A DNA stretch of 64,000 nt from Trichoplax adhaerens (lineage: Eukaryota > Animalia > Placozoa): contig NW_002060949.1 of NCBI RefSeq assembly GCF_000150275.1, forward strand, positions 333,861 through 397,860. Direction: 5' to 3'. The position numbers and the translations under genes were made by a program. The notes beneath the pieces are model-generated. The model saw only the letters and a program-made list of their open reading frames with translations. It was not told where the DNA came from and did no database searches. Shown here in pieces: positions 21,801 through 64,000 of this stretch. How positions within the stretch are numbered: the first letter of the stretch is position 1; every line of letters begins with the position of its first letter.

Positions 21801-24800
21801 TAATATCTGTTTAATTCCCAAATTCAGGTTGTATAAGCCGAACATTGTAATGAAAACTGAGTCCATTACAAATATAATGTACTGTATCATGTTTCAAGCG
21901 CTTTAGATGATCTTTAGATACATCAATTTACCTCTCGAACTTGCTCTATTATTGGATAAATTTCTCGATAACAGACTCTATAACCAGCAATTAAAGCTTC
22001 ATTTAGGGCATCAGTGTATGGATTATGCCATTCAATGTTCACAGAATGGGATTCACTATCAGTTATAACTTTATTAATAACTGGAGATAAGGGTACAGCT
22101 ATAGATTGACAATAAAAGAGCAAGAAAGAATTCTTTGAGAAATTACGTAGCAATTAATGCAATCTAAACGTACCCTCATTGCATTAATGAAATATTTGCT
22201 TGTCATTGTACAAATGAAATCAGTACTATATGTGAAATAAGAAACGGGAATAAATAGCTATGAGGCTAATACAGTATATTTTAAAGTAATTATAGGAATG
22301 AATAAATTCATTTTTAGCTTCAGAGTTTTCATTTATCCAGATAGAATTTTAGCATACTACATGCATTATAGTATGTTATATATTGTAATGTATAACATGC
22401 AATCAAATTTTTATTCACGCATTAAGAGAACAATCTCTGATAACATGAAATTAGTAAACAATACCAAAATGCTACTGGCATGTACGCTCACCTTCTTTAC
22501 TCGCATTCAGTCTTTTCGAGCATACTCGTGTTTCTCCGTAGTAGTTACTGCCTATTACACAAAACATTAGATCAGCATCAAAAACAGCTGATATCTTACA
22601 TAGGGTTCCTTTTTGTAGACAGAAACGGATGCTTCTATTTGATGTCCTTTTCGGGAAATACGTAGTTCGCCGGATATCATAGCTGATTGCAAAGAAAGTA
22701 TTTACGATATTCCACGTAATATAAACTTTCGATCCAAGAAATTTAACCTCCAAATTGTAAATGTATGGTGGACCTAATCGAAATTTTTGTTTAGTATTGC
22801 TATAAATATTTGTGCCATCGAAATAATAAACTCTAAATCCAATCTATGTTAGCTTTCAATTTCATTAACAATGATCATATAATTTTTACAAGGGATCATT
22901 ATATTACTAGCGAGATTTACTCATAGAGATCTATCTGCGATACCGTATGTAACAAAATAATTCTTATTAATTTAGTCAGATTACCAGCAGGAGCTTTTTA
23001 GAAATAACGAAGATCTCTATAAATTTTTCCAGTATTATGAAAAATGCACTGCTACGTTTACTTTATTTATGCCTACTAGCTTACCTCGAACTACGAGCTG
23101 TACTAATTGCGTTTCAGCACGGATATTATTATTCTTATCCGTTGCCGTACAGTAGTAATCACCAGCATCTTCACTAGTAATCTGATTGAAAAGTAATTGT
23201 GTGGTTATGTTGCTATGCTTATTTCCGGTATGATTTTTTACCGACACTGTATTCGGAGGATAGCTCTTACGCCAATAAAGCTTGATAACTTTATCTGTTT
23301 CACTTGACCAATTATATACAGTACAGTTAAATACTGTTGAAGAATTAATATCTGTTTCATAATGTCCAGAAGGCATAGTAGTTAAATAGATAGATGCTGT
23401 CACTAAAAGGTAGATAATATATAAATTAGGTATCTTTTCTCTAAAAATATAAATTACTTTACATAAATGAAATATAAGATTAGCCGTTTATTAGAATTCC
23501 CATATTCTAGTTTTTATTTAGCTTCTAAATCTATTTTATTGTAAGATCAATGTATATATATATATATACGAGTATATTCTGATTTAGCTGAATAAGAAAA
23601 ATTTATGAATTATAAAGTGTTGGTTCCTTGTAAATGCTCGTACTTAGCTACTTAGTAAAATTTTATTTACCACTACGCGGTAGCGTTTCAGATTGATAAT
23701 TAATAATATATAATGTATAAAACATAACCAGTTCTTTCATTGATTGTTAACTTACGTCTCCATTTGATTATATTAGTGCTAGATATAATGATAATAACTA
23801 CTCGGTATTATAAAGTACTCGTGAAAGGTATATTGTATCATGATTATTATTAAATACTTGGATTGTAGTGAAAGTAACAGTGGAAATAGCCATATACTGC
23901 TCAAGTATAGCCGCTTACCTGGAAAACTTTACAAGTCTAGAAACTAAAACCGCTATGATTTCGTACATTGCCAGTAGCTGACAATGATATTAAATATGTC
24001 ATTAAATTACCGATTCTGCATAGTTTTTAGATCTAACATCATAAACTTATACGATTAATATTCAGAGCCTTTGCTTAATATACTCAGAAGCCATATCTAT
24101 AAACTCTTACGGTACAGAAATGCTCTATGTAGTCCTTATGTTATTCTAACATCTAATCTTATCCTTACTATTTTACTAGGATTTCTCACCTTACGGTATT
24201 TTTAACCGATGGAACTACTGTAATGCTCGAATTAAAATTAAATTTAATTTTTGATAATAATATTTTTAACATACTGCCGATGGTAAATATTAATCAAAGC
24301 TAAAATACGTACTGATATTCTTAGTAGATTTAATCTTTAAGAACCCCCCTGTACATGAAAGAGGCAATAGAGGGCAAGTAAAATAGAAGGATTAAAAATA
24401 TCTACAAGGATGTAGATGGACCTGCTTTAGATTGTTTTATTGCCCACTAATATAGCCTCTGCTATGATAGTTCGAATTCGTAAACAAGAATACTTATAAA
24501 ATCATATTAATTTCCAAAGCAATGCACGGTATAATTCTTTGACGATAGATTAAGAATGGCTTTCCGTAGTATTAATCACTAAAATACTCTTAATAGATAA
24601 TTTCGCTATTTTTGGCTAAGATTTTAATAGCCATTCATAGAAAACGAATAATACTGGCTGCCAATGTGATAGTTAACGATTACTTCTTTAATAAGATGAC
24701 AGTGGATATGCAAAGCTTTGCGTAAAAATTAATACTAGATATTCATATTGCAATTCATAGAATCTTTAAACTTGATTAAGGTTAGCTTGATAAATACGTA

Positions 24801-46946: not shown

Positions 46947-49900
46947 ATGCTTATAAATTTTACCACGCTCACTTTGTTAGTAGTATTATGTTCTGGTAAT
47001 ATCTAATATCAGTTGCTACATGCATGCTGCTGCTTATTTGCTCTAGGTGTACCTTTAAACCCAGAATATTAAAGTTCTTATTAGTTACATTATTGTGATG
47101 TACTGTATGTGTTGTATCCGAGTGTTGCGATAATGTGGTTTAGATTGAGTCAATACAAGTAAATATATACAGTATACAGTATATAGCGTATAGCATTGTA
47201 TTAGAATGTCGATAATGTATTACGGTGATGTTATGGAATGAAGCTAATTGCAACAACGGGAAGGATTACCATACAAACCAATATATCCGCGCAAATCTTT
47301 AAGCAGTGCATGGGTATTGTTGTTTTAGTGAGTTGCTAAAATTTCTTCAGCACCAAGTAGTTCTAGATTAACCTAGATTTAGTATGAATGGTAAGTTCTA
47401 TGCAGTTCTTCATCGCATGCCTCTTATTTATCTCGATATCTATCTTTCTTGAATTAATGATATACTGTACGTACTACAATTGATATTTCAATTAGTTGCT
47501 ATCATTTTTGAATTCCGAGTCATGCGTCATCTTCAGTTTTTTTGATAGAGCTTTTAAGATATTGATGATCATAATTTATACAAAGAACAATTACAACGTG
47601 AAGTACTCTTTAACTTAAAGGAATCTTTCATAACTTTCAAAAAATACTTTCAATGAGCAACTACAGGTTTATTAGCAGGCGGTACTAATTAAATGATTCT
47701 AGAAAATACTATAGCAGGAAGACGAAAGATAAAGGATATGCTGGTTGTTATATTTATGATTACGATAATAAAGATATAATATTATTTGCTGTAGTTAATA
47801 ACGTGCTTTATAAAACAGTATCGTAATATTATGTAAAATGATTCTTGGTCTTTGTCAGCTGCGACGTATCTGCACCGTATGCCTCAAAACAATGAAGATG
47901 GTAATTTCTCTATTCAGCTATTCCCTATTGAGTCCATTATAAAGTAATTACAAAGGATGGCAGATTCGATTGTGTGCTAAATTACGTGTAACCTCAGATT
48001 TTCGAAGCTTAATTTTTTATCAAGAAAGTTACAATACAGATGAGATATCACAAGGGTAAAGTAAGTAATAGGTAACTAAAATCCTTACTCTAACTGCCTG
48101 TAAGTTTCGACAATAAATAAAATGCTATTATTATTGCTTTGCTGAGACTAATTATTGTAACAATACTATTTTCGTCACGCAGAAAATATTTCAAAATTAC
48201 TGTAAATTTTAATTTATTTTTATTACCTATCTTATGTCATCAATAATTGCCTTCTTAATTGGATATAAATTGATTGAACTAAAAAAGTTAAATAAACAAT
48301 TGCTTCCTGCTGCGTTTTGTACCTCTATTGGACGCATTACAATGGTACGATCCTAAATAAATTAGCCATTAGCCATTACCCATCAAGGACTCTTCAGTTT
48401 TGCTTCTGTGGATAGACATCGCGAAAGAAATGAAACATGAGATTTATTATCACTTCTACTTGGTTTTTGAGAATAATCATTACGAGTCTGCTTATAGGTT
48501 CAATTCTTAACAATGGTAATAATCACCGTAAAATTACACGTAATTAAAGATTGAAACGAAAAAATTTCAAGCATACCATTAGTTTCTCCTCTTCTTTTAA
48601 TAGTATAGTCTACGAGTGTATATATATATATATAAATTTTTAATATCATTATTGAGTACTTAGAACTTCAAGTTAATATTAAGCTTAGCTGGAAATTTCA
48701 TTGTCTGGCCTCAGCGTACTTCGGTAATAGGCGTGGAACATAAGTCTAAATGATTACCTTTATATTTACTGTAGTCCTACCCTTTATTAATAATTAATAG
48801 CAAACTTAACTGCACTGAAGTAATGGTGATACTAGTGGTACAATATTTCGATAAGAAATCTACTTCGTAACGCAAATTTTTATAGGCAATAAATAGAAAA
48901 ATATGGTTATAAACCTTGCTTATTAACTATGTATTTCATGCCGATTCTTTTATTTAATATTAGTAATCTCCACACAAATTAAGAAAGAGAGGAAGACAGT
49001 TCTATTCGTTACTCTTAATAATTCAATCGATATTATATGTCCATTTCAAAGACATATTATTACAAGCTTTAATGATTGCCAGTATAGTTGGTTAAAGGAA
49101 CATAATGATTCTTACGGAAAGAAACAACTCCCGGCAGACTTACTAGTGGGTTTCAATTCATTCGGTCAAAATTTGAATATTTCTTATGTGACGAAAGCAG
49201 ATGAGGGCAACTACATTTGTACATGTAAATATCTTAATGCTAGTAGGACGGGTTTAGTTAATATTTCCACTCTTGAGCTGCACATTGGAGGTAAAGTCAA
49301 AAAAGTATTCTTAAGTCACAATTATAATTACTTATCAGTTATAAAATCTATCGGAGGGACCTGACTTCATACGTAATTTTAAATACCAAATTTAACTAGA
49401 GCCTCCAAAAAAAATTTTGCATGCCGACATTTCAACGAAGGGAATTACCACAACTGTTGCTTGGAATAAATCTAACCTGTGTCAGAAATTAAATGGTTAT
49501 CGATTTCAGGTCAACTATACTGATGGGCAACGTTGGTACATTGGATGTAATAATACGACAAAATGCTCTTGTATTATGAGCCGTCATATAATAATAACAA
49601 GTATAGAAATAGTAATTACTGCTACTAATAAGTTTGGATCAACATCAAGCGATGGATTTATTTATTACATGGCGAATAATGGTATGTTATTTGCTAGAAT
49701 GCTAAATAATGTAGCCTTACGGTGTTCATGCTACCGTAAACCATAAATTTTTATGCATTTGCTATATTTATAGACTTGCTCGAACGTAGCTTCTTAGTAT
49801 GTCCGATAGTTTTTATTACTATATAATTCTGTAAGTGTTTTTGTAATAAAAATTTATCTGCGATCCGTCTGAAGTACAAAAAATTCAAAACTCTAAATGA

Positions 49901-52900
49901 AATTATTCTTTTAGTAAAGTGTAAGATAGCAGGCAATGCTTTCGACCTACTTAGTTCGCTATCAACTTATAAATGGTAAACTTTGCTTTAAAGTTGTGCC
50001 GTATCCACCAAACGCTGTTATGGTGAACGCAGAATATAGATCTATTACAGTTCGTTGGAGAGCACCACTAGGTTATACATCAATGCTACTTTACGAATTT
50101 ATAGTATATAAACGACGTATTAAACCATTAGTTCTGATGGAAAAAGAATATAAGGTGAGTACTAAATTAATCGAATTCAAAATTTGGGTATACATCAACA
50201 TCCTTTAAGAAAAATTAGTAACTTAGACTATAAAAAATGTTCACTTTATAAACTACAGGATATTCAGATACTATTTTCCAATTTGATGAATCATGAATTA
50301 TATGTAGTATTATCCGATATGCGTTACAATCTCGCCAGTTAATTATCGTCACATAAGATGTCGCAGTTTCATAATAGGATATAGTGCGTATCAATTATTA
50401 TATTTTAGAAAAGTAATGCCTTATGAAAGAGAAATCTATGTACTGTATAAGTTTATATATCTTAGCCTGCAGTGATAACAGGTACGGATATATATGATAC
50501 TTGGCGTCGTATTACTGTCTTGAAAATAAATCTGATCTTCTCAATAATCGTGATTTCAATAATTTTAACTTTGCGTACTTGCAGAATGTTGTTATTTCCG
50601 CTGACAATTTGGAAACGAGCTTTAAGCACACTTTCTTTGATTTGATACCTGGAGCAACCTATGAATTTTATATTGTCAGCAAAACTCGTTATCAGGAAGT
50701 GAGCGAGCCAACAAGTAGAGTGAGAATAAGCTTACCTGAGGAAAGTAAGAGGCTTTATATTATTTACTTCGTAAATTTTTTAAATAGACAACCTTGTCAT
50801 TGTAATTTTTAAGGATGATAATTTCAACTATAATAGAAGGTACGGTATTATAATTGAAGTGTGTTACATTTTTAGTATCATTTACTTTATTTATTATTAT
50901 TAATACCATCAAAGGCGCGGATGATACCACATTTTGTAGTCATATTTTCTTGATCCATCTTTCCCCGATAAAGGACGTAAAATGCATACTATCGTAATAA
51001 ATTTAACAAAATCATTTTTGGCTTAACAAATTTGCCAAAAAGTTTTACACTTTTATGAATTTATAATAAACCGAATCGCTAGAGTTATTTATACTGGTTT
51101 AATTGCTTAAGATACATAGGTAGGGCTATTGCGTACTCTATGAGCTTTGATTTTGTTTGCAATGCTTAAATGGGAATTTCAAATGTGTTACCAAAGCAAA
51201 TGTATACTGAACTCTATCAAGACTGGTGTTTACTACTCGAGAAGATAAATCTTTAGTCATATCATATTCCTATAATGGTGTTTTGCCTAAGAAATATTGC
51301 AGATGAGGAAAGTCAGACTGGGAATATCTCGAAATTCAAATCACTAGACATTGTTATTCTTGAATCGCTGACATTATGAGTATCGACTGGAAATTCATCA
51401 CGTACCTGCAATGTATATTTAATATCATTTCATGATTTTGTACGTACAGTACCGGTATACTGTATAATAATAACCCAGCTGAGGTAAAATATAAGATAAG
51501 TAAAACATTTTAACGCCTTATACGCTTACAATCCAAGCCATCATATCGTTGTGCGTCGCGAATAATAAATTTTTGATGCGTTCCTACAGATTGTTTAAAT
51601 CCGATTACCGCTGTTGTGAAATTAAACTTCGTTTCTACACGCCATATTCAGATTAAGTGATGTTTTCACGATAATCTTTTTGTGTAGTGAAATGAAATAC
51701 TTTTTTTGTCATACCGGTTGTATGCCATCATTAATCTGTAAAATTTTTGTTCATTAATTAGAACCGTACGCTGGACCTACAGATCTAAAATGTACTTGTT
51801 CAGAACATGATCCAATGGGTAGACTTTGCTTTTGTCATTGGAAAGTTAGTGTAATCTAATTTTCAAAGAAACATTATTAATTGAAATCGAATTATTCCCC
51901 AAGTTATGCTCCGTTTTATAATATATATTCTAAGATTCAACATCTGATCAAGATAATCTATGATGCAAAATTCTTATGTGTGATTGTACAGTTTACGAGC
52001 AACGTTGAGTTACACGAAATAACAAATATGTAGTGCATATTATTTGCAACTTGGTGAGAGTTGCGATTAACTGGAGAAAATCATAATTATAATTTCAGTT
52101 CTGTTAGTTCATTAAAATTAGATATCATGATTGCCATATATTCTAATCAATTTTTTACAGTTTAGTCAATTTTTTGAACAAATTATTGTTAAATTCTACA
52201 ATGAAGAGACTTCTTAGCTTAATTACCGTCTTTCAACTGCCATAAAAAATTTTCTTATTTAGTTTACTAATAGTAGACTTCGAGGTAGATTATTTGATTG
52301 CTAAAATTGTAGGTTATACAATGGATATTGTAAATTTGGCTAATTGTAATTTATGATGATGCGTGATCTTAAATTTTAGTCAATTGATCCGTGGCTAGCC
52401 TACGGTGTTATAGTGGAATATGATTTATATTACATCGTGGCCTCAGAGGATTTGGAGAATAGAACAGCAAATAAAATATCAGCTATGGGCAATATAACTA
52501 CTGTTGAATTAAGAAATCTTTCTTCAGAGGTTTCGTACACTGTAACAGTTGTGGGTAGAAATAAGGCTGGTAGTAGCGTTAGTAGCAAACCTTTCACCAT
52601 TCAGCGGATTCCAAACACTAAGAAGGATTCTTCTGGTAGAGTATCATTTACATACTCTCTTAAGAATTGTACTTAAAAGAGAATTGATTAGTAATTATTA
52701 AAATTGTTAATAAGTTTGTATTGCAGCTGAGCGTTGATCAAACAAGGTTACTCCTCTGATAAATTATTGACTGTGTCACGTGTATTAAACTTTAAATAGG
52801 TACCCCTCCGACTACAATCCTCATTATTATACTGGTGGTATCTGTTCTTGTTGTTTCTGCTATATTAATTCTGGCCGTTGCATTTTTTTATAGGGCGATA

Positions 52901-53711
52901 ACATACAGGTATTGATACGCACCAATCTAATGTACGAATAATTATGTCTGCAAAGCTTGCAGTAAACTAAGAAAAATACTTACAAAATTAAAGAAAGTTA
53001 TCTAATATATGAGTTAGAATTTTAAATGATTAAGAGTTGATAATTCGCTAACTTTTTTTTAATTAATTTATTTAATAGACTGACAAGCAAGGCCAATGAA
53101 GATGATCGTGATTCATTGATGTATGTATTTGCCGTATAGAATCTAATAGTAGATTCGTGTTCAATGAATATGATCATGATACTAAGATGTTAATGTAGAT
53201 GTAATTCTGTGCTTAGAAGTTGTCAACCATAAATACTGACTCATTATACTGTAATGCAACATCAAAAAGAACGTTACATAATTGATAGTAAATGATATTT
53301 TATGATTTGAGTAGCGATAGAAATTTGTGCATAAATTTAAATCAAAGTATTTATATACTACCAGAACTTACTCTGTCTGTTTGGATTTAGGAAAGAAACG
53401 GATTCAGTGCAATCACTGGCAGAGGTTAGGAAAAGCAATAGCTAGATAATAGTTTTATTTAGCCGCATGTATTTGTACATGTTTGTTAGCATCTAATTTT
53501 AAATATAATGCGCTTTAAATTTTAGTCACACATATATGAGCAAATATCGTTCAGGGGTTCTACATCTATAATTCACGTCAATCAGGCCGAAGTGAATAAG
53601 CAAGAAGAAGATGGAATGCAAGATAACAGACTTTCAATGTCGACAATTGACAGCTGTCCATATTCTAGCGTAATTATTGCCTCAGGTTATCACGAAAGCG
53701 ATGATTGTTAA
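46947..53711 (+). CDS. Single-pass receptor: signal peptide, Ig, 3 FN3-type domains (cytokine-receptor-like), TM, short Tyr-containing tail; probable paralogue of the 18824-28664 gene
   Basis: Approximate exons: 46947-46995 (MLINFTTLTLLVVLCS), 47859-47900, 48964-49290 (Ig: YICP..YSW..DEGNYIC), 49400-49681, 49994-50154, 50584-50745, 51762-51843, 52379-52636, 52800-52908 (TM ILIIILVVSVLVVSAILILAVAFF), 53079-53120, 53391-53424, 53526-53711. Phases are consistent where checked. Confidence 0.85.
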
Positions 53712-55274
53712 ACTAATTCGGCTTCCTATTAAGAACTTTTAGCGGTAATTGTGTTCTATTTTGTAAACTATTATGATTATTAAGATAGTAGTAAACTATA
53801 ATACAGCTCTGAACTATCATTCTACGTACGCTAGTTAAGGGAATTTAGAGTAAAATCTTTAAAATAACCTATTAATAGACGGAGTTGAAAAAACAAGCGG
53901 TAACCAGCTTGGCTTATTGTTTATATTTAAAAGGATACAAAATATTATATCTGTACATTTATCGTTTTCAACCCAAAATTTTGATCATCTTGTAGTATAC
54001 CAATTACTCTAAAGGACATCTACAAGGCTTTAGAAAAATAACTTGCTGCCAAAGATTTAAATACATACTACTAATTAACGATTTTTCTTTGTGCTTACAT
54101 ATTTGATACACTATACTAATTGCAAACGCCAAAAGTTGCAAGCTACTAAAGGTGCTAATCATTTTATGTACTGGTGCTATGATAATGCTTTGTCACATTT
54201 TAACACTAATGTTATTCACATTTGCAATAGACGTTTCGCTTATACATGTAATATTAACGCAAATAAATAAAAGTGATCTAAAAACGGAGTATAGAAATAA
54301 AGTAATGATTATATCATTATCCCCATTGAAGTATTTTCAACATGATAAAATAGTTACAAATTTCGTACTAAACTGTCAAAAATTTATATTTTGGAATTGA
54401 AAAGTTTTAAATTTAAATTTAAACTTATATTGCTAAAAAATTGGAAATTTTACTATAATCAATTATTGTACTTGGGCTTGCTTAGATTAGACTCGATAAT
54501 TAATATTCTTAAGAGCATCATTTTAATATTAGGATATAGTAAATCAGAGTTAGGAGTATTTTGCTTCTGAAGAGAAACGTTGCAGTTTAGGAATAACTAT
54601 GATTACGATACACTGGGTACAGTTTAATTAATTTAATACCGTCAATTTAATATCTTCTATAGCAACGAGTACTGTAAATAGTATGACATTATTATATGTA
54701 ATATTACTGTTCAATAGCAATTTAAGGAAGAATTTTGCTTTTCTGAACTGGAATTATAAGCCGAAGTTTTAAAAGTTTATCACTTTAATATAAAGTGAAA
54801 TTTTTAATCAAAAATGTTCATAATAAGGCTATCACTTAAACGTATTTCTTACAAACGATATTACCTACTATATAGATAATTTTGTGCAATACTACGCATA
54901 ATTACTTTTTGGATATTTTTATACCAGATAGATTAAGCTAACTTGGTATACGCTTACAAGTCAGAAATGATTCTTAAGATAAGAGTATGATGTCATGCTG
55001 CACGATAGCATATGTCTTCTAAAGATACGTTTATCAGCTCAAAAACCGTCTGACTATCAGGTCTAGATATTCTGATGTGGAAAAATTATGTAGAAGCGAT
55101 CAATACCATAAATAGAAATTGCTAAATCTTGCTTTGGCGAAATAACAAACGTTACAGTAGAATAATGGATTTATTTATGATATTCACTGATTTAACTACC
55201 ATATCGATAGCCGAGAATATAATATAGAGCTTCGTAATTAAAATGTTTATGAAAACTGTTAGGGAGAAAATCAT

Positions 55275-58200
55275 TCAGTCATTAACATGAGAAATATTGT
55301 GAACACGTCTACGACTTGAACTCCATCGACGTTTCGGTAAGTCTGGCGACGATAGTCGAGGAGAAGATGGAGTGGAAATTTTTTGTAAGGTAGTTTCAGA
55401 ATTATCTGGTGTCGCATGGTGAAGGTTATTGGCGGCTTTTGGCGAATTTAACTTTAACAGGTCAATTTTGAACCCTTTCTTCAATGTTTCGCGATCTATG
55501 GGTGCAACAATGTCAGGAATATTATTCTTATTCTGAAATCCTGTAGGTGATAAGGGGGATGAAGTTTCAGATTTTGTTTTGTCGATTGGAATTATAGCAT
55601 AATGCCCGTCTATATCAGTTGAATCCTTCAACGAAGTTTCGAGATAGCCATCTTCTTCACTGTAATCCGAGTTTTCGATTTTCTGCTATTAAAAGTTCGT
55701 AAATTTTGTAATTACTGTAAGACGATACTAAAGCAATAGATAGGATAGTGAACACCATTTACTGTACTTGCTTACCATTTTGGATTGAACAACGCAATCA
55801 CACTGCTTTGCGTTTTCCTCATCATTGATAATATCTTTCGATATCCTTGTTTCAGGTAAGATATCAGGTGCGATACTACCATTGTTCTCAGATTGTAAAG
55901 TATTTGAGAAATTCTCCTTAACTTCATCATTTATAGCAGATTTTACTACAATAGCATAAACAGGGTCATTAGTGTTTTTGGTATCGCATTTCGTTTTTAA
56001 TTTATTTTTTAGTATTATAGATGGTTGATCCATAAAAGAATTTTTCTCTCTTAAATTTGATTTGAGATTACTTTGCACTAAAGTGTCTTCATTATTAGCT
56101 TTAGTTTCTATCTCTGGACATTGACGAGTAGCCAATTTCTCGTTTCGAAGGTGATTTATACGTTCGTATTTGTCCTTAATACTCGTCGATCGCCGTATTG
56201 TAACTCCTAGCGTTGCCACGTTTTCAACTGCTGACTGGACAGTATCAAGAGTTTTAATCGAAGATTTTGCACCAACGCTACAGTATAGCTCTTTGTGTTC
56301 AGCGTTTAAACCTTCGCCAGGATTATTAACTATTGTTTTTTTAGTAGTTTTATTTTCAGAATCTAACGGAATATGGGTGCCTGCTCGTCCTGAAATGTTT
56401 GGCTTTATTCGCAATGATGACGTACTATTTGTTCCATGCTTAATTCGAGACGTGTTAGTGGTACTCTTATATTCAATTGGCAGAGTACGAGTAGTGTTTG
56501 ACTTCTTTACCCGCGCGTAAGTATGGTCTTCGCTATGATAGTGAGATCTACTTTCTAAGCTTGAAACAGTATTTTCTTGTAAATTTATCTTGCTAGATTT
56601 TTGCATATGCATATCCCGGACTAAAATAATAGAAAATTTAAATTTTAAGCGTACAGTACAATTATGTTCTATATTGAGTAAAGCAAATTGCATAGTGCAT
56701 TTATAGATCATTCCATTTAACATCAGCTAATAAAGTAATTGAGTATACTATACGATTCTACTGTTATCATTAAGCAATGTTTGATATTACTTAAATAAAG
56801 TTCCTTTTTCTGTAGATGTTTCCACAGCTTCATTCCGATAATGCATATAAAGCTTAGTAGAACTATGCCGGCAACAGAGAATCCAACACCCATACCGATA
56901 ATAGAAGGCCGAATACCAGGCATGCTGGTTATAGGTGACGTTATTGATTTCGCTGTTATGGGTGTAGTAGGCGAAGTCATAGTCCGTGTTGATGTCGATT
57001 GACTTTGCATTCCTAAAACAATTAATTATTACGAGTAAAAGAATTAAAATATTTATGAGCTTACGGCAACATGTCAAAATTTAGTTGTAGCTATTGATAA
57101 CTACGCAGATCATACTTGTCGATACATGAATCGTTGGACTTGGTTTGCTATTTCCGTAACTATCCGTTGTTGTGACATATATTTGATACACCTCATCAGT
57201 CGATAAATTGGTCAAGTTTGTTGAAATACCGCCATGATCGACAATTTTTTTCAGGTAGCGAATTGAATTAATAGTTCTGTAGTGAACTAAATAATGCAAT
57301 AAAACACCATCAAACCTTGCTCTAGACCAGCGGACGAATAGTATTGTTTCTGTAACTGCATCTGCAGTTACAGTTTCTGGAGGCATGGGTAAACCTTTGA
57401 ATTAGAAGTAAGTAAGATATTTAATTAAACGAGCTACAAACTTACTAGTTTCCAACCTGCATATCATCTATGAGTATTAAATCGTTTCTAATTTGTTCAT
57501 AGAGATGTTTTACATCGCATGATAGAGTTTATATAACATTCGCACATTAACCTTTAGTTTTTTTAAGCAGCCAACTGCTGTAAATAACGCCGACAACATT
57601 AATAGCTGCAATTCGACATTGATATAGAGTCCGTTCTTCTAAATAGCGGACTGTCGCCTTTGTATTGTTAAACTTTTTAACATCACTTTTGTAACAACTG
57701 TTGCATGTTGAAGTGATTACAACATCAGATGTTGTGTAGCATTCTGCATAATAAGTTATTGCAGACAGATTATATCCACCATTATATGATACATCGTCCC
57801 AGAAGACAGTTATGTTGGTCATATTACTATCAATGTTTCGGATTTTCGGCTGATTGGGAAATCCTGAAAATTAATGTAAAAGAAATTGAATGAATGGTGT
57901 CATTGTCTGAGAGTCAGAAAGTTTCACTGTTACTACGGTATCATTCAGCGATCTTTAATTGAAATATCGTTTCAAATTAATGCACTACTGATATAACGGC
58001 ATATAGAGTACTGGAATATTATAACGGTAAATATTAACAAGACCTTTAGTAGCAATTATAAAGATGTCGCTATAGCTACTTCCATAAGTGTTGGTGAATT
58101 GAAGCTGAAAGTCATAGCTAGTATTTATTGCTAGATTTCTAATGAACGTTTCCTGTACGCCTATTATGGAAGCTTTCTCAACCATCGGTTGTATTGCCCG

Positions 58201-61200
58201 AAATCGCAGATCATGACTTGGCTTATATCTTATAAGATACTTTACGGGCAGGACAGGATCAGACACAGGTTTAATCCAAACAATTTGAGATGAGTTTGAA
58301 GTTGTTATTGCTCTAATAATCTTGGGTTTACTTGGCTTATCTGGAAAACATTTGCGATTATATTTGTATACAATCAACTAATGAGAACAACAATTTACTA
58401 CTTAACGAACGTTTACAAAAATTAGATATTAGTTTAGCCTAACCTTTCGTTTTGATTAAAACTATCTTACTGTTGTTACTCTCACCAAAGTCATTTACGG
58501 CAGTAACCCATATATAATAGATCGATCTTGGATAGAGATCTTTAATGATGCAATTATTAATCAAACATAATACTTTTCTGGTAAGCCATTCTGTATTATT
58601 ATTTTTAAGTTGATAATAGACTAGAAAATGGAATGATTTAGTTATTCCTTGATATCCAGGAAGAAAAGTGACCAGGCAACTCCTATTTGTAACATCATTC
58701 ACGGTTATATCGCTAACTGTTTCCGGGGGAGCTTCAGCATTTTAAAGGAAAAAAATATCAAAATTATAAACATTGAAGTCATGGTATTTTTCATTTACGC
58801 AGTTAGCACAAAATCTTGTTAAATGTGTCCTATGTTAAGTAAATCATGAAGTATTAACAAAAATGTGATGCGTAAGAACCTGCGATGATGATTGTTATAT
58901 TCTTTCGAAGTTTGCCATGCTTGTTTACCGCTAGACAAAAATAAGTACCAGTATTTTGCAAACGTAGCTTTGTCAATACCAATCCGTGAGGACTTTTACC
59001 AGCTGATATTATTTTCGGCTTTTCTCTTGAGTTACGATACATTAAGTAAACTTCTGGACTAGGCATACCATTCGCGTTACAAGATAAACTAAAATTACTG
59101 TACCGCTGTATTATATAAGGACTATGGCCATTAGGAATCATTCGCATAGAATTTGGTGCACCTTCATTAAAAGCGTATCGTTATGCTACATTATTATCCA
59201 ATTGAAATATTTGCTACTTGTGATATTTTACGATACCTTCTACTTGTATCCAGAACTTCTTAACATAACGCGTATTATTATATATCCGTAGAGTAACAGA
59301 AAATTCGTAGCTTCCAGTAAATTCGAATGTTGCCGATGGGAATGACAGAACGTCGATTCCACTACCTTGTTCAGATGTACGACAAATACTCTGGATTGGA
59401 TCGGCTATTTCACTGGTATGCTTGAAATCAGTGGTACAGTTATAAGCCACTCTTTTGCCATTGTAGTACCAGTCCGAGGTCGTAGCGAATCTTTCTATAT
59501 AAGTCAGATTTGCAGTAACATTTGTGAGCTGCCCTGCAAGTACTGTTTGATTTATTGGATAAACTGTAATATCATCCACCGAGTATAGTTCTAAACGCAA
59601 AATAAATAAGAAATTCATTGATATTATGCGATAATATGCTGTGGTCAGGGACTGATACTCTTGTAGTGGTATTATCGTACAAAATGATTTATTGCAAGGT
59701 GACTCTTCAGCTATGCCGCTCGTCAGTAGTAGTCTTAAGGAATTCACAATACTTCCAATATAATAACCAGAAGTAGCTACGTATACCGTAAACAAACCTG
59801 AATCACAAAAGATGCCAGTATATCCAACATCATCACAAACGCACTTAAAGTCTGGTACAATGTTTTTACATACGCCGTGGATGCATGGGCTACTTGAGCA
59901 TGGATTTATTGCTAATATACAACCATTGATTTACATAGGAAAATTTCAAATTACATTATAATAATATATATTTATCTTTTGGAGAATAATGATAGCCCAA
60001 CAAGTAATTTAATAGTCTGTTATCTAATAATCACCTATTTCACATAAAGTACCCGTTCTTGTTATGGGACAATTACAAGTCACATTGTTAAATTTTCCTG
60101 GAATACAAGTGGCTGTGGAGTGACATGGAGAACTAACGCAAGGATCGGCTATCGTGTTGAAAAAATACGTAGTAAAATCAAAGAAAGTTATTTAGTTAGA
60201 TACAGGAAGTGAATCTCCGAACGTTTGAGTGTCTCTAGTACTGATACGTGATGTCAACTACCGTATTATATGGTTTTGTGATAAGAACATGAGAAAATAT
60301 GCACGAAAGAAACACATCAGAATATAGTAGTAGATATTCGCAATTACAGAACATTGAAGCCTTAAGATTTAGCTTGCATATGAACATTATCTTGTCGCTC
60401 GTAACCAAACTGCAATCATTAGCTTAAAATAATTTATCGCCATTTTGCAAAAACCGTAAATCAGAGTAATTACCTAGTTCACATATATCTCCAAAATAAC
60501 CTTTTTCACATTCACAAGTATAAGGACGCTGTACATTAGTTTCTTTGGTACTGCAGATCCCTCTTTGAAGACAACTGCCTGAATTGCAGTGTAGTATATC
60601 TAACAGTAGATTTTTATTAATTTTAAAGTACCCTGAAATAAGGAACCTTCGATTGCAATTTTATGTTAAATATAAGGAACAAAAATTAAATTTAAAATTA
60701 TAGCTTAAAAGCTAATGATATAGGATGAGTCACCGGATTTTTAAGCGCTTACAAGGCATTTTGTATTTTTTATTAGAGAAAAACACTCAAATACTTTCGC
60801 AAAAAGATCATTTATATAGGGCATAAATAAAGCTGAAATACTGTAATGATAATGTATTCTATTAATGCCAGATACATCATAGAGGTTATTACCAGTATCA
60901 GCTCGAATACAAGTGTCTGAATTTAAAATATTTTCTTAGTATAACTCCCGAAAATGGACTTTCTTACCGATATCGCATGTCAATCCCGTCCAATTTGGTG
61001 GGCAAATACATAAAAATTCAGACGCATTGTTTGTATTAATACAAGTAGCATTAGTATGAGCGCAAGGTCTCGAATCACAACTTGTTGATTCACCTATTTT
61101 GAAAAAAATACATGAGATGGTTACTGATACTCATAGTTATGTCTCGTTCGTTTCTCTTTATCAGCTGCTAAAAATATCTATATAATATACTTAGCGTAAC

Positions 61201-61493
61201 GCAAACACATATGTACTGCATATACAGAGTTTTTATTGTATAATGCAGATTAAGTAACCATGAAAGTTATCTTGATAATTACAACTTTACGACAGATAAT
61301 AATCATGGTAATAACTTGATACTATACGAAGAATTATAATACATATTACGACATTAGTTCTCATAATAAGCTTGGTGATCATAAATTTCAATAATTTGTA
61401 GATCTTACAAATATAGATAATTTACTCACATTTCATGAATATTGCGAACGTAGCAATGATGATACAAAAGAAGCTGCTATTTGCTGTAAACAT
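55275..61493 (-). CDS. Single-pass receptor: signal peptide, 4 EGF, 2 Ig, 4 FN3, Ser/Thr stalk, TM, long low-complexity non-catalytic cytoplasmic tail
   Basis: Signal exon 61493-61430 (MFTANSSFFCIIIATFAIFMK). EGF exons at about 61094, 60599, 60148 and 59911 (e.g. CDSRPC..ATC..FLCICPPNWTGLTC). Ig exons at about 59590-59237 and 59162-58880. FN3 ORFs at 58439, 57985, 57547 and 57081. TM exon 57012-56791. Tail exons 56620-55776 and about 55685-55275. Confidence 0.88.
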
Positions 61494-64000
61494 TACACTT
61501 GACTTCGTGAGAATGTTCATTGCATTAGAGTTATCACCGAATGCTTCTTATTTGATTAAATATTAATTAGTCCACCGTTTAAATCAGTTCTTTTGTAAGA
61601 GACTCTGTATCTCTCGTTTGTTAGATTAGTTTGATGGCAGGAAGTTATATTAGCATGTGATTATGGTTGTCTCTAAAATTGCATTAGAAGAGTACATAAA
61701 TGAAGGCATGAATTTGCGTATTACTGTCAATAGTAAACAACAATAATCCATCACGTGGCAACTTTTGTCTAAATAAACATACTCGAAGTACAAACGATTT
61801 ATGTTATTAAAATCCGATCTTAAGTTAATTGTGCGCTTGAATGTTTATTACCAACATTTTATCACTATCAGTGCTGGTCAAATTTTTAGCTATTCGATAG
61901 ATAGGATATTTACAACTACATACAGTTGCCTACTACTTGAGGAAATTTTTCTCAAACCATGCTTGCAGTGACTTCAGTGAATCATCTCACGTTAGAGTTT
62001 TCCTCAGTTTTAATAACTCTAATTTCGAGTTAGTGAATTGCGAACCAAAGGGATAATTTTACTCATTCAAGATAATAGTATAATTTAAAGTAATGTGTAG
62101 ATTTAGCATATGGTATTAAGAATATTCTTTAGCTTATTTCAGTTGGTTTGGTCTAATATCGCGGCTCTTAACTAAAGCTATGTACACAAAAACTTTTTAT
62201 ATAACATAGATCCCAAATATTCGTATGATATTAATGTATAGTTAACAGTGCAAGTACATGTAGAATGTGTACAGTGCTCAAAGTACCGTATAAAGAAAGT
62301 TTGTTCTACTAAGTTCAACTAACGACATCTAATTCATACTACATCAAAGATTATAATCCAATAAATGTTTTCTAAAATCGCCCGTCTGTTATACATATCG
62401 TTGCAACTTAGAACGAAAATATTCATTTAGTAAATTTATGGGCTAAGCAAGATAATTTAAAATTCGGTAATATGATAAATTGTTCATTAGCAACTATAAA
62501 TCACTTTGCGTTATGCTCGCTGATATCAGAATCAATAACTACGTTAAATTAAAATAAAACTGGCCAAAATCCATAGATTAATTATAATCGCAGAATTATT
62601 CTTTGCAACATAATGGTTAGGTAAATAGCCAATTTCGTAAACTTACGGTAACAGATTTGCACAATTACCCGGAATTACAATAAGGGAAAATTAACGATAT
62701 GCCACTATATTACAATAATTATAAGTGTGTATGGAGTGAACTGGTGTCTGCAAATAACTAGTAGCTATTTACTATATGCCTATGTATTAGTAAGTGATAC
62801 GATAATAGTATCTCGAAATGTATGAGATAAATCAGAATTATGAATTTGTCTGAGCAAGAAAATGACCATTGTCTAAAACTAGTTCTATATTAGAAACTGA
62901 AGCAATACTTGCCATTCATTACATCGTGTATGTTCGTATACGCGCATATTGCGGAACTGTGACTCTTATGAAGTCATACTGTTTACTTATATGCAATCAT
63001 CGCTGGATTACGAGTGCATTTGTTCCGTAGCATATGTATAATATATACGCGTATACTATGTATACAGAGATTGAGAAGTGAAATAAGTGAGTGGCTGTAA
63101 ATTATTGTAGAATATAGTATAGCTGTTAGCAAACAAGTATGTGAAATACCAGGAGCGGAAAGGTTATAGTATTCAAATCTTGTTAATTTTACGTAAACGT
63201 ACTATTACTGTACTCATAAGTATAGCGCTTTCATGGAGCTGTCCATACAATGCCCGTAGCTTGATTAAGGTAAACTGGTTGGCTTTACTGGAGTCAGTAC
63301 CGTCAGCGAAGTGATGGGTATTTGAGCTAGTATCGTACATCTAATTGCTACAAGTCAAATGGTAGCTTAATGCCTTAATTGAAACTGATGTTGTAAGTCA
63401 AGTACTCGTACGTGTTAAATATATATTTAATTAATGCCTGTCATGAACTATAGCAGTGACCACAGTACGAGAGTTATAATTATTACTGAATCGTAAGGGC
63501 AGACGAAATAAATTAAACTCTATTTACTGATTGCATCATTATCGAAAAAGATTTGTTAATAAAGGTAATACACAAATTATGGTCTTTGATTCGTATGCCT
63601 GAATACAGAGCGAGTTCAGCTCTTCTATTAAAACTTATAATCACTTTCTATTGCAGTTCAGATATACGAATTATATTTAATAGCATTAGAATCAAATCAA
63701 AGCTATCTACTGATGTTAACTACAATCAAATCTATATTAGGAAGAGATTATATAATAATAAAATTATCGACTAGAAAGTAATGCTAATATTAATTAATTG
63801 ATATTTACAGTAGCAACTTAGTCTAGGGGTACATATAGATGATCGTGCAGTTTTCTGATGAAAAATTTACAATCACTTGATAAATTTCTTAATATCAGAT
63901 TTACTTTTGTAAATAGATGATTGCGAGTATACAATACTGTATACGTTACAGCTTCAAACAAATATAGGCCTAGATGCATAAACAATACAGCAAACTTGCT

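What the first reader, a model, noticed from the sequence alone, without database searches (positions are those of the whole stretch)
46947..53711. gp130/class I cytokine-receptor-like ectodomain in a compact non-kinase receptor of an apparently early-branching animal
Seen: the spliced protein is Ig, then a Cys-containing FN3, then two FN3s, then TM. Its segments line up with my recollection of gp130 D1-D4. The end of D2 and start of D3 read GCNNTTKCSC..SIEIVITATNKFGSTSSDGFIYYMANNVVPYPPNAV, against gp130 DC..TSC..NIEVWVEAENALGKVTSDHINFDPVYKVKPNPPHNL. D4 reads EEKPYAGP..HWKSIDPWLAYGVIVEYDL..YTVTVVGRNKAGSS, against EDRPSKAP..VWKTLPPFEANGKILDYEV..LTVRNLVGKS. The WSxWS position reads VSEPT, and D2 lacks the first canonical Cys pair. 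D4, however, starts PTDLKC...CHW, which echoes the PxNLxC...CxW cytokine-homology signature. The tail has YEQI and PYSSV; the gp130 SHP2/SOCS3 site is YSTV. Established: JAK-coupled class I receptors (gp130, Domeless) are best known from bilaterians. Inference: this could be a proto-cytokine-receptor family, or a convergent Ig-FN3 receptor.
Basis: partly seen in the sequence, partly recalled or inferred. Interest (0 to 1): 0.8.

Follow-up and report, generated by a model that had tools for sequence, protein, structure and literature searches.

The report
Cytokine-receptor-like membrane protein of Trichoplax
A real, already catalogued but unstudied gene of the simple animal Trichoplax encodes a single-pass membrane protein whose outer part looks most like vertebrate gp130/IL-12-receptor-type cytokine receptors; that would place this receptor type before bilaterian animals, but the family's hallmark motifs are missing and membership is not proven.

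Summary
Window 46947-53711 (+) carries an 11-exon GT-AG gene, TRIADDRAFT_57819 (P0008, 553 aa). Its Trichoplax sp. H2 orthologue (P0001) already bears the automatic name 'Interleukin-12 receptor subunit beta-2'. The architecture is signal peptide, Ig, a Cys-containing FN3-like domain D2, FN3 D3, FN3 D4, a TM helix and a 92-aa tail without a kinase.

The gp130 reading is partly supported.
- The best single alignments to solved structures are IL-12Rbeta2 (28.5 bits) and gp130, in register across the domain borders. Prolactin receptor, CRLF1 and EBI3 follow.
- Two generic-FN3 controls, one from this same window, hit phosphatase and adhesion FN3s instead.
- For the ESM Atlas's own model, all ten listed structural neighbours of D2-D3 are class I/II cytokine receptors (TM 0.61-0.77). 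gp130 is the top neighbour of the whole protein.

Against membership:
- Pfam sees only fn3 and Ig.
- There is no WSxWS motif, no first Cys pair and no Box1.
- No JAK-specific domain was found in the genome.
- D2 alone is not significant.
- Both AlphaFold runs failed.
- No relatives were found outside Placozoa.

Best reading: a placozoan-restricted, non-kinase receptor with a cytokine-receptor-like two-domain binding module. It probably signals through tail tyrosines rather than JAK.

The parts
46947..46995 (+). Phase-1 donor CTG|GTAATA.
   Evidence: It is intact in Trichoplax sp. H2 with one residue changed. It is not part of either database model, so its use is inferred from the need of a type I membrane protein for a leader.
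47879..47899 (+). Alternative first exon of the JGI model P0008 (MPQNNED). It has no signal peptide, so it is probably a wrong or incomplete 5' end.
48437..48514 (+). Alternative first exon of the H2 model P0001 (MRFIITSTWFLRIIITSLLIGSILNN). It is signal-peptide-like and is spliced directly to exon 3, skipping the Ig exon.
48964..49290 (+). Exon 2: one whole Ig domain (phase 1-1), with the DEGNYIC motif.
   Evidence: Pfam Ig_3 at E 6e-5 to 4e-4, below the cut-off, plus I-set and ig weak hits. It is part of P0008. The H2 protein sequence is identical.
49400..49681 (+). Exon 3: D2, a divergent FN3-like domain with four Cys (C144, C166, C172, C174 of P0008). It is the candidate N-terminal domain of a cytokine-binding module.
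   Evidence: No Pfam hit for the H1 sequence. The orthologue P0002 hits Tissue_fac at E 6.5e-4, 20 bits against a cut-off of 27, over model positions 11-106 of 107. It is under purifying selection. C166 and C174 align to the second disulfide of PRLR, IL-12Rbeta2 and gp130.
49994..50154 (+). Exon 4: first half of D3 (FN3). It starts at the linker VVPYPPNAV.
   Evidence: Pfam fn3 on P0008 residues 215-307; exon check.
50585..50744 (+). Exon 5: second half of D3. The WSxWS position reads VSEPT.
   Evidence: The HMMER alignment to gp130 places 'sept' opposite gp130's WSDWS region.
51762..51844 (+). Exon 6: start of D4, with PTDLKCTCSEHDPMGRLCFCHWK (four Cys, C...CxW-like).
52380..52635 (+). Exon 7: rest of D4 (FN3).
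   Evidence: Pfam fn3 at E 9e-6, 26.2 bits, above the cut-off.
52800..52908 (+). Exon 8: transmembrane helix (ILIIILVVSVLVVSAILILAVAFFY) and the start of the tail.
   Evidence: It is the only confidently modelled segment in both AlphaFold runs: a helix from residue 434 with pLDDT 83-91.
53079..53120 (+). Exon 9: tail (RLTSKANEDDRDSLM).
   Evidence: It is present in both database models.
53391..53424 (+). Exon 10: tail (KETDSVQSLAE).
53526..53711 (+). Exon 11: the end of the tail with the tyrosine motifs HIYEQI, CPYSSV and GYHES, then the stop codon. There is no proline-rich Box1 anywhere in the 92-aa tail.

Best explanation
Shown: the gene is a functional, placozoan-restricted gene for a type I membrane receptor. 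It consists of a leader, one Ig domain, a two-domain unit D2-D3, a membrane-proximal FN3 (D4), one TM helix and a 92-residue tail without enzymatic domains.

Inferred: D2-D3 adopts the bent two-FN3 'cytokine-binding homology' arrangement of class I/II cytokine receptors. The overall layout (Ig, binding module, FN3) copies gp130/IL-12Rbeta2 domains D1-D4. The protein binds a secreted protein ligand at the D2-D3 elbow, possibly with the Ig domain as a second contact, as in gp130-type receptors.

Inferred: because the tail has no Box1 and no JAK-specific domains were found in the genome, signalling is probably not through JAK. It more likely runs through phosphorylation of the tail tyrosines (YEQI, YSSV) by another cytoplasmic tyrosine kinase and recruitment of SH2 proteins, or through a partner chain.

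Open: whether the module is a true diverged homologue of the vertebrate one or an independently bent FN3 pair.
For: Real gene.
- Eleven GT-AG exons translate exactly to P0008.
- The D2 exon is conserved under purifying selection in a second placozoan: 69% aa identity, third-position bias 15/16/51, dN 0.196, splice sites kept.
- The locus is intact in Trichoplax sp. H2.

Architecture.
- Pfam finds fn3 twice and a weak Ig_3.
- The TM helix is clear.

Cytokine-receptor likeness.
- PDB phmmer gives IL-12Rbeta2 as the best single alignment (28.5 bits, i-E 7.4e-6, query 91-374 against chain 86-370). gp130 scores E 1.2e-5 (query 163-386 against chain 146-370). PRLR scores E 4e-3 over its whole two-domain module, CRLF1 0.09, and EBI3 0.47 with P0001.
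- A 3-sequence profile still ranks gp130 first.
- Controls: the Opisthorchis FN3-repeat protein P0004 and a Trichoplax RPTP FN3 pair from this same window hit RPTP, Dscam, contactin, neogenin and titin. They hit no cytokine-binding module; they touch only membrane-proximal FN3s of IL-27Ralpha and LIFR.
- The orthologue's D2 gives Tissue_fac as its only Pfam hit (E 6.5e-4, nearly full model length).
- For D2-D3 of the ESM Atlas's own model (pLDDT 0.69), all ten listed structural neighbours are class I/II cytokine receptors: IFNAR1 TM 0.77, IL-11Ralpha 0.72, gp130 0.71, PRLR/EPOR/GHR-type 0.66-0.68, with 183-187 of 200 residues aligned.
- For the whole protein, gp130 is top (TM 0.52, 391 residues), followed by OSMR and IL-12Rbeta2.

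Non-JAK signalling.
- The tail sequence has no PxxP or PxP motif.
- JAK FERM_F1, FERM_F2 and Jak1_Phl were not found in the genome.
- STAT_alpha (2 loci) and SOCS_box (5 loci) were found.
Against: - No curated cytokine-receptor family (IL6Ra-bind, EpoR_lig-bind, Lep_receptor_Ig, Interfer-bind) is hit.
- WSxWS is replaced by VSEPT and the first Cys pair of the N-domain is absent.
- D2 alone has no significant PDB match, either as a single sequence or as a 2-sequence profile.
- Dscam scores about as well as gp130 as a whole-sequence E-value.
- By language-model features, the nearest clusters of the whole protein are generic Ig-FN3 adhesion proteins; a cytokine-receptor cluster comes only at rank 13.
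- The structural evidence rests on one moderately confident ESMFold model. Both AlphaFold2 runs failed (pLDDT 41 and 33), so no search against solved structures with a model of my own was possible.
- hhalign finds no link between D2 and the other Tissue_fac-like exons of the genome.
- No relatives exist outside Placozoa in 1.8 or 5.8 billion proteins, so homology cannot be bridged by intermediates.
- Ligand, expression, isoform and phosphorylation are all untested.
- The genome scans for JAK domains are exon-by-exon and weak.
Confidence: 0.5

Rival explanations
1. It is an ordinary, fast-evolving Ig-FN3 cell-surface adhesion or co-receptor protein. The likeness to gp130/IL-12Rbeta2 reflects only shared FN3/Ig ancestry plus a language-model guess at the inter-domain angle. 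There is no cytokine-type ligand binding.
For: - Pfam finds only fn3 and Ig.
- Dscam, contactin-3, RPTPdelta and titin are among the PDB hits.
- By language-model features the nearest clusters are turtle, fasciclin-2, iHog and neuroglian.
- The Ig domain has the canonical DxGxYxC motif and gives no Lep_receptor_Ig hit.
- The gene sits among other Ig/FN3/EGF receptor genes in the window.
- There is no WSxWS and no Box1.
- The big-search hits for D2 are FN3 repeat proteins.
Against: - Generic FN3 controls hit adhesion and RPTP FN3s at E 1e-10 to 1e-28 and hit no cytokine-binding module. This protein hits adhesion FN3s only at about 1e-5 and places cytokine receptors first per alignment (against 84, 86).
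- The titin and P0003/P0004 scores are sums of many weak repeat matches: the best single titin alignment is 18.6 bits, and P0004 averages about 9 bits per repeat.
- D2 is not recognised by the sensitive fn3 model.
- All ten listed structural neighbours of D2-D3 are cytokine receptors.
Confidence: 0.35
2. It is a canonical class I cytokine receptor, a gp130/Domeless orthologue, that binds JAK through its membrane-proximal tail and activates STAT.
For: - Collinear alignments to gp130 and IL-12Rbeta2.
- The Atlas structural neighbours.
- STAT and SOCS-box genes are present in the genome.
- A review states that Placozoa lack only one unit of the pathway (PMC11193209).
Against: - The tail has no Box1/Box2 and its only proline is in CPY.
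- There is no WSxWS.
- There is no YxxQ motif.
- The three JAK-specific Pfam domains gave no match in the genome.
- No orthologue is detectable in any other phylum.
- The canonical JAK architecture and the assembled pathway are reported as bilaterian (PMC3670263).
Confidence: 0.05
3. It is an annotation artefact or decaying gene: the exons are not co-transcribed, or the protein is not made.
For: - The three models disagree on the first exon and on inclusion of the Ig exon.
- No transcript-derived copy of the protein was found in the collections.
Against: - All 11 exons are open, in phase and GT-AG.
- Two independent annotations agree on exons 3-11.
- The D2 exon is under strong purifying selection between distant placozoans, with conserved splice sites.
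Confidence: 0.03

Closest known systems
Tall class I cytokine receptors of the gp130 family (gp130/IL6ST, IL-12Rbeta2, OSMR, IL-31RA, LIFR)
   Same: - N-terminal Ig domain, then a two-domain module, then FN3, TM and a non-kinase tail with tyrosine motifs.
- Best single PDB alignments, collinear over the Ig/D2, D2/D3 and D3/D4 borders.
- Top structural neighbours of the Atlas model.
- The second N-domain disulfide aligns (C166/C174).
- The H2 orthologue is automatically named IL-12 receptor subunit beta-2.
   Different: - Only one membrane-proximal FN3 instead of three.
- No WSxWS (VSEPT).
- The first Cys pair is missing (VAW in place of CxW).
- The Ig domain is of the canonical IgSF type, with no Lep_receptor_Ig hit.
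- No Box1/Box2 and no YxxQ.
- The sequence similarity is only marginal (E about 1e-5 against the PDB, nothing in billion-scale searches).
Drosophila Domeless and molluscan IL6R-like receptors, the earliest accepted membrane class I receptors (PMC3670263, PMC13203501)
   Same: They are invertebrate, gp130-like, non-kinase receptors with a binding module followed by FN3 domains.
   Different: Those are bilaterian, keep a recognisable cytokine-binding module and act through a JAK (Hopscotch). No sequence relation to this protein was detectable here.
Class II cytokine receptors and tissue factor (Pfam Tissue_fac plus Interfer-bind)
   Same: - No WSxWS.
- The N-domain has only the second (C-x7-C) disulfide. 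The tissue-factor Cys49-Cys57 spacing is from my own knowledge.
- The orthologue's D2 hits Tissue_fac sub-threshold.
- IFNAR1 is the best structural neighbour of D2-D3 (TM 0.77).
   Different: - D3 has no cysteines, so the class II C-domain disulfide is absent.
- An Ig domain precedes the module and an FN3 follows it.
- The H1 sequence itself does not hit Tissue_fac.
- hhalign finds no link to the other Tissue_fac-like exons of the genome.
Non-signalling alpha receptors (IL-6Ralpha, IL-11Ralpha)
   Same: Ig plus binding module plus spacer plus TM plus a short tail without Box1. The IL-11Ralpha cluster is a close structural neighbour (TM 0.72).
   Different: Their spacer is an unstructured stalk, not an FN3 domain. 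They keep WSxWS and both Cys pairs.
Ig-FN3 adhesion molecules and receptor phosphatases (Dscam, contactins, titin, LAR-type RPTPs)
   Same: Ig followed by FN3 domains, phase-1 domain exons, PDB hits at similar whole-sequence E-values, and nearest by language-model features.
   Different: True generic FN3s of the same genome match these families 5 to 20 orders of magnitude better. D2 is not recognised as fn3. No adhesion protein is among the ten listed structural neighbours of D2-D3.

Membership tests
Class I (haematopoietin) cytokine receptors | Two tandem FN3-like domains set at a sharp elbow (the cytokine-binding homology region) | tested here: inconclusive
   In the ESM Atlas's own model (pLDDT 0.69), D2-D3 superposes on ten cytokine-receptor clusters at TM 0.61-0.77 with 183-187 of 200 residues aligned. 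There is no independent confirmation: AlphaFold2 failed twice, so no search of solved structures was possible.
Class I (haematopoietin) cytokine receptors | Four conserved Cys (two disulfides) in the N-terminal domain | tested here: not met
   The first pair is absent: VAW stands where PRLR and IL-12Rbeta2 have CxW. The second pair is plausibly present: C166 and C174 align to C3/C4 of PRLR, IL-12Rbeta2 and gp130. Two further Cys (C144, C172) are lineage-specific and conserved in P0002.
Class I (haematopoietin) cytokine receptors | WSxWS motif near the end of the C-terminal domain | tested here: not met
   The position reads YQEVSEPTS.
Class I (haematopoietin) cytokine receptors | Match to a curated family model (IL6Ra-bind, EpoR_lig-bind, Lep_receptor_Ig, LIFR_D4 and others) | tested here: not met
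   hmmscan of the exons, P0001 and P0008 lists only fn3, Ig and chance families. Genome scans for PF09240 and PF09067 were empty.
Class I (haematopoietin) cytokine receptors | Membrane-proximal proline-rich Box1 (JAK docking), with a JAK present in the genome | tested here: not met
   The 92-aa tail has a single proline (CPY) and no PxxP or PxP. FERM_F1, FERM_F2 and Jak1_Phl gave no match in the genome. Those are exon-wise scans, so absence of a JAK is not proven.
Class I (haematopoietin) cytokine receptors | Statistically significant sequence similarity to accepted members | tested here: inconclusive
   Against the PDB: IL-12Rbeta2 E 3.4e-6, gp130 1.2e-5, PRLR 4e-3. A profile gives 2e-3. Nothing is found at E<=10 among 5.8 billion proteins or at E<=1e-3 among 1.8 billion with D2.
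Class II cytokine receptors / tissue factor | Tissue_fac-type N-domain followed by an Interfer-bind-type C-domain with its own disulfide | tested here: inconclusive
   The orthologue's D2 hits Tissue_fac at E 6.5e-4, 20 bits against a cut-off of 27. The H1 D2 gives no hit. D3 has no Cys and no Interfer-bind hit. IFNAR1 is the top structural neighbour.
Generic IgSF/FN3 surface proteins | Ig and fn3 domains recognised by the general Pfam models | tested here: met
   fn3 at E 8e-12 with two stretches (D3, D4). Ig_3 at E 4e-4, sub-threshold. D2 is not recognised.

The most novel reading that the evidence does not exclude
D2-D3 is a genuine, highly diverged homologue of the cytokine-binding module. 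That would mean membrane receptors of the haematopoietin/interferon-receptor superfamily existed before the placozoan-bilaterian split, in a form without WSxWS, Box1 or JAK. This receptor, and perhaps its neighbour at 18.8-23.4 kb, would bind one of the secreted four-helix, IL-6/Unpaired-like orphan proteins that other agents of this scan flagged in the same genome (unchecked leads s1-733977, s1-766204, s1-752961).
Probability: 0.2. Interest if true: 0.85.

Novelty: new variant of a known kind. Interest (0 to 1): 0.6.

Why it matters
Dedicated membrane cytokine receptors of the gp130/Domeless type are currently traced only to bilaterians (PMC3670263, PMC13203501). The latter paper explicitly names placozoans as unsampled. 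Only the atypical CRLF3 is discussed for earlier branches, and with contradictory statements for Placozoa (PMC6797617 against PMC12026705).

A placozoan receptor with a gp130-like ectodomain but no JAK-docking tail would suggest that the ligand-binding module is older than its coupling to JAK. It would also give a concrete protein with which to test that order of assembly. And it would offer a candidate receptor for the orphan helical secreted proteins reported elsewhere in this genome.

If the likeness is only convergent, the gene is one more lineage-specific Ig-FN3 surface protein of modest interest.

No paper in the library mentions this gene. Its only label is an automatic best-hit name.

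Tried and rejected
1. AlphaFold2 on P0008 alone, and with the only available alignment (P0008, P0001, P0002), gave mean pLDDT 41 and 33. The models are unusable, so fold search (Foldseek/VIA against the PDB) was not run.
2. Relatives for a deeper alignment were sought three ways: the billion-scale HMMER search with D2, word searches with P0001, P0008 and D2, and the own genome with P0001. Only the H2 orthologue and one exon-sized Logan ORF turned up. One search was a parameter slip, corrected.
3. The significant-looking hits of D2 to a 6102-aa verrucomicrobial protein and a fluke protein, and of P0008 to titin (E 1e-11), were rejected as repeat-sum effects. Each is the sum of many weak per-repeat matches.
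4. D2 alone against the PDB gave nothing significant, either as a sequence, as its orthologue (PRLR E 1.1) or as a 2-sequence profile.
5. A link between D2 and the other Tissue_fac-like exons of the genome was tested. BLASTP gave E 0.024 with one of them and hhalign was null. Rejected.
6. The neighbouring 'second family member' at 18.8-23.4 kb was compared exon by exon. Only the Ig exon is marginally similar (E 0.008), and Pfam sees Ig plus weak fn3. A MAFFT alignment of its exons to P0008 (A1) was visibly wrong and was not used.
7. The single weak Interfer-bind match in the genome fell inside this window (8697-8864) but is one FN3 of a large receptor phosphatase: a chance hit.
8. A joined, typed spliced model was never sent to any tool. 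All whole-protein work used the database proteins P0008 and P0001, and all other work used exon references. In one search the exons were concatenated inside a script only to verify coordinates against P0008.


Full report
**Source and gene model**

The window is G000:C1408:333861-397860 of a 105.6-Mb, 1414-contig assembly. That size and contig count, together with the exact protein match below, identify it as Trichoplax adhaerens. Earlier agents of the scan say the same.

On the + strand, stop-free segments and GT-AG junctions give a gene of 11 exons:
- E1 46947-46995
- E2 48964-49290
- E3 49400-49681
- E4 49994-50154
- E5 50585-50744
- E6 51762-51844
- E7 52380-52635
- E8 52800-52908
- E9 53079-53120
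- E10 53391-53424
- E11 53526-53711

From E2 onward the translation equals, letter for letter, the 545 C-terminal residues of P0008. P0008 is TRIADDRAFT_57819 (XP_002113913.1, UniProt B3S1M8), an 'uncharacterized protein'. The Trichoplax sp. H2 orthologue P0001 (RDD46155.1, 463 aa) differs at two residues. It carries the automatic name 'Interleukin-12 receptor subunit beta-2'.

The three models differ only at the 5' end:
- P0008 starts at 47879-47899 without one.
- P0001 starts at 48437-48514 with a leader-like peptide and skips the Ig exon.

E1 and the Ig exon are intact in H2. The upstream gene, an acyl-CoA dehydrogenase, ends about 2 kb before E1.

Whole-protein work used P0008 and P0001, and everything else used exon references. 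In one search the exons were concatenated in a script only to verify coordinates.

**Is it a real coding gene?**

The D2 exon has an orthologue on a Logan contig from another placozoan read set (P0002/L012).
- 64 of 93 residues are identical.
- Differences by codon position are 15/16/51.
- dN is 0.196 with saturated dS.
- The AG and GT splice sites and all four cysteines are kept.

That is strong purifying selection. Transcription itself could not be checked with these tools.

**Architecture**

- Pfam finds fn3 in D3 and D4 (E 8e-12 for the protein) and a sub-threshold Ig_3 in E2.
- Pfam finds nothing in D2 and no cytokine-receptor family.
- The TM helix is obvious and is the only confident part of the AlphaFold models.
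- The 92-residue tail has tyrosines in ITYRL, HIYEQI, CPYSSV and GYHES. It has a single proline, so there is no Box1.

**Relatives**

- A full HMMER read of 1.8 billion representatives with D2 found only P0001, P0002 and a few repeat proteins. The scores of those repeat proteins are sums over many weak repeats.
- Word searches with P0001, P0008 and D2 found nothing else, even at E<=10.
- The own genome has no second copy at E<=0.01.

The gene is therefore placozoan-restricted at the level of detectable sequence.

**Test of the gp130 idea by sequence**

Against all PDB chains, P0001 gives these hits:

| Chain | E-value | Query range against chain range |
|---|---|---|
| Dscam | 1.3e-5 | |
| gp130 | 5e-5 | 78-296 against 153-370 |
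| IL-12Rbeta2 | 8e-5 | 26-283 against 114-369 |
| RPTPdelta, contactin-3 | 5e-4 | |
| Prolactin receptor | 3e-3 | 30-202 against 7-181 |
| CRLF1, EBI3 | about 0.5 | |

The prolactin-receptor alignment covers that receptor's whole two-domain module.

With the Ig domain included (P0008), IL-12Rbeta2 becomes the best single alignment. It scores 28.5 bits (i-E 7.4e-6) over query 91-374 against chain 86-370. It runs from the last Ig strand through D2 and D3 into D4. The nominally better titin hit (E 1e-11) is the sum of four weak alignments, the best of which is 18.6 bits. A three-sequence profile keeps gp130 first.

Two controls show that this pattern is not what FN3 arrays give in general.
- The fluke FN3-repeat protein P0004 hits phosphatase, fibronectin, contactin, tenascin and titin FN3s.
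- A pair of FN3s from the receptor phosphatase in this same window hits phosphatase, Dscam, neogenin, contactin and Robo FN3s at E 1e-28 to 1e-10.
- The only cytokine-receptor entries in these controls are membrane-proximal FN3s of IL-27Ralpha and LIFR, not binding modules.

The orthologue's D2 has Tissue_fac, the class II receptor N-domain family, as its only Pfam hit. It scores E 6.5e-4 over nearly the whole model, below the cut-off.

In the alignments, C166 and C174 fall on the second disulfide of PRLR, IL-12Rbeta2 and gp130. The CxW of the first disulfide is VAW.

Against this, D2 alone has no significant hit in any form.

**Test by structure**

AlphaFold2 without a usable alignment failed twice (pLDDT 41 and 33). 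I therefore could not search solved structures with a model of my own.

The ESM Atlas holds this exact protein with a model of moderate confidence (pLDDT 0.69, pTM 0.53).
- For the whole protein, the nearest model clusters are gp130 (TM 0.52 over 391 residues; a second cluster at 0.51), OSMR, a 'cytokine receptor' cluster and IL-12Rbeta2. These rank ahead of Robo, contactin and a phosphatase.
- For D2-D3 alone (residues 117-316), all ten listed neighbour sets are class I or II cytokine receptors: IFNAR1 0.77, IL-11Ralpha 0.72, an IL-27B/IL-6Ralpha-type cluster 0.72, gp130 0.71, prolactin/EPO/GH-receptor types 0.66-0.68 and IL-31RA 0.61. Between 183 and 187 of 200 residues are aligned.

Two domains can superpose that well only if the inter-domain angle is similar.

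This is a single prediction by a language model and counts as one line of evidence. By language-model features, the whole protein sits among generic Ig-FN3 adhesion proteins, with a cytokine-receptor cluster at rank 13.

**Pathway context**

In the genome:
- STAT_alpha matches two loci above the cut-off.
- SOCS_box matches five loci.
- STAT_bind gave nothing.
- The JAK-specific FERM_F1, FERM_F2 and Jak1_Phl gave nothing.
- IL6Ra-bind and EpoR_lig-bind gave nothing.

These scans work exon by exon and are weak evidence of absence.

In the literature:
- The canonical JAK architecture and the assembled pathway are placed in Bilateria (PMC3670263).
- Membrane IL6R/gp130-like receptors are traced to molluscs and arthropods, with placozoans named as unsampled (PMC13203501).
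- One review says Placozoa lack only one unit of the pathway (PMC11193209).
- CRLF3 is reported both absent from and present in Placozoa (PMC6797617; PMC12026705).
- The placozoan immunity survey does not discuss such receptors (PMC6321704).
- No paper cites this gene.

**Interpretation**

Shown:
- It is a real, conserved, placozoan-restricted gene for a type I membrane protein with Ig, three FN3-type domains, a TM helix and a short tyrosine-bearing tail.
- Its weak but reproducible and specific nearest matches in sequence, and the only usable structure model, point to gp130/IL-12Rbeta2-type and, for D2-D3, class I/II cytokine receptors.

Inferred:
- D2-D3 is a bent ligand-binding module.
- The protein binds a secreted ligand.
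- It signals without JAK, through its tail tyrosines or a partner chain.

Membership in the class I family is not established. The WSxWS motif, the first disulfide, a curated family match and Box1 were all tested and not met. The mix of features (no WSxWS, only the second N-domain disulfide, the Tissue_fac hit, IFNAR1 as best neighbour) is as close to class II and tissue factor as to class I. That would fit either a very early offshoot or convergence.

My confidence in each reading:

| Reading | Confidence |
|---|---|
| Receptor with a cytokine-receptor-like module | about 0.5 |
| Plain adhesion-type Ig-FN3 protein | about 0.35 |
| Canonical JAK-coupled receptor | about 0.05 |

**Earlier notes of the scan (leads only)**

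- Three notes describe secreted four-helix IL-6/Unpaired-like orphan genes in this genome, for which 'no receptor is known'.
- One note describes a class II/tissue-factor-like membrane protein.
- I found Tissue_fac-like exons at other loci but no detectable relation to D2.
Beyond the Ig domain it shares hardly any sequence.

Noticed in passing
window 18827-23403 (-): A second receptor-like gene with the same exon skeleton: Ig exon about 23053-23370, Cys-containing FN3-like exon about 22484-22765, two FN3s each split in two (the last starting LHFLCNPQDEYNILYNCHLSW), a TM exon about 20119-20292, and a long tail exon 18827-19312 with RPLPPAP and several tyrosines. Only the Ig exon is marginally similar to P0008 (E 0.008). 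Pfam sees Ig plus weak fn3.
   Followed up: partly
window about 3050-13700 (+): A large receptor-type tyrosine phosphatase gene. It has a dozen or more FN3 exons, a TM near 10.2-10.4 kb and two PTP domains (WPDHGVP and VHC..AGVGRTG near 11.8-12.1 kb). The genome's only Interfer-bind match (E 0.17, window 8697-8864) is one of its FN3 exons, so it is a chance hit.
   Followed up: partly
L020:16838-23083 (-), about window 55270-61520: In the H2 annotation the gene just downstream, on the opposite strand, encodes a 1280-aa protein with EGF, Ig and fn3 hits. The window is therefore a neighbourhood of Ig/FN3/EGF surface-receptor genes.
   Followed up: no
window 47879-47899 and 48437-48514 (+): Two alternative first exons are used by the two public gene models. 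The second skips the phase 1-1 Ig exon, which could be a real Ig-less isoform or an annotation error.
   Followed up: partly
L015 (G000:C1400:1370063-1370332, -) and L016 (G000:C1404:2026302-2026565, +): Two exons elsewhere in the genome match Pfam Tissue_fac (27.9 bits, above the cut-off; 23.5 bits). They are 41% identical to each other and share a W...C...W..C-x7-C pattern. They may belong to the class II-receptor-like gene(s) noted by another agent. No profile link to D2 of this gene was found.
   Followed up: partly
L013 (G000:C1414:9845024-9845248) and L014 (G000:C1413:8995512-8995727): Two loci match STAT_alpha above the cut-off, suggesting two STAT genes in Trichoplax. STAT_bind found nothing in the exon-wise scan.
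   Followed up: no
P0003 and P0004: D2 shares a W-N-x-S-x-x-C-Q-x-x-x-G-Y motif with tandem FN3 repeats of a 6102-aa verrucomicrobial 'Ig domain family' protein and of an Opisthorchis protein. The E-values (8e-14, 1e-9) come from summing 29 and 6 weak repeat matches.
   Followed up: partly
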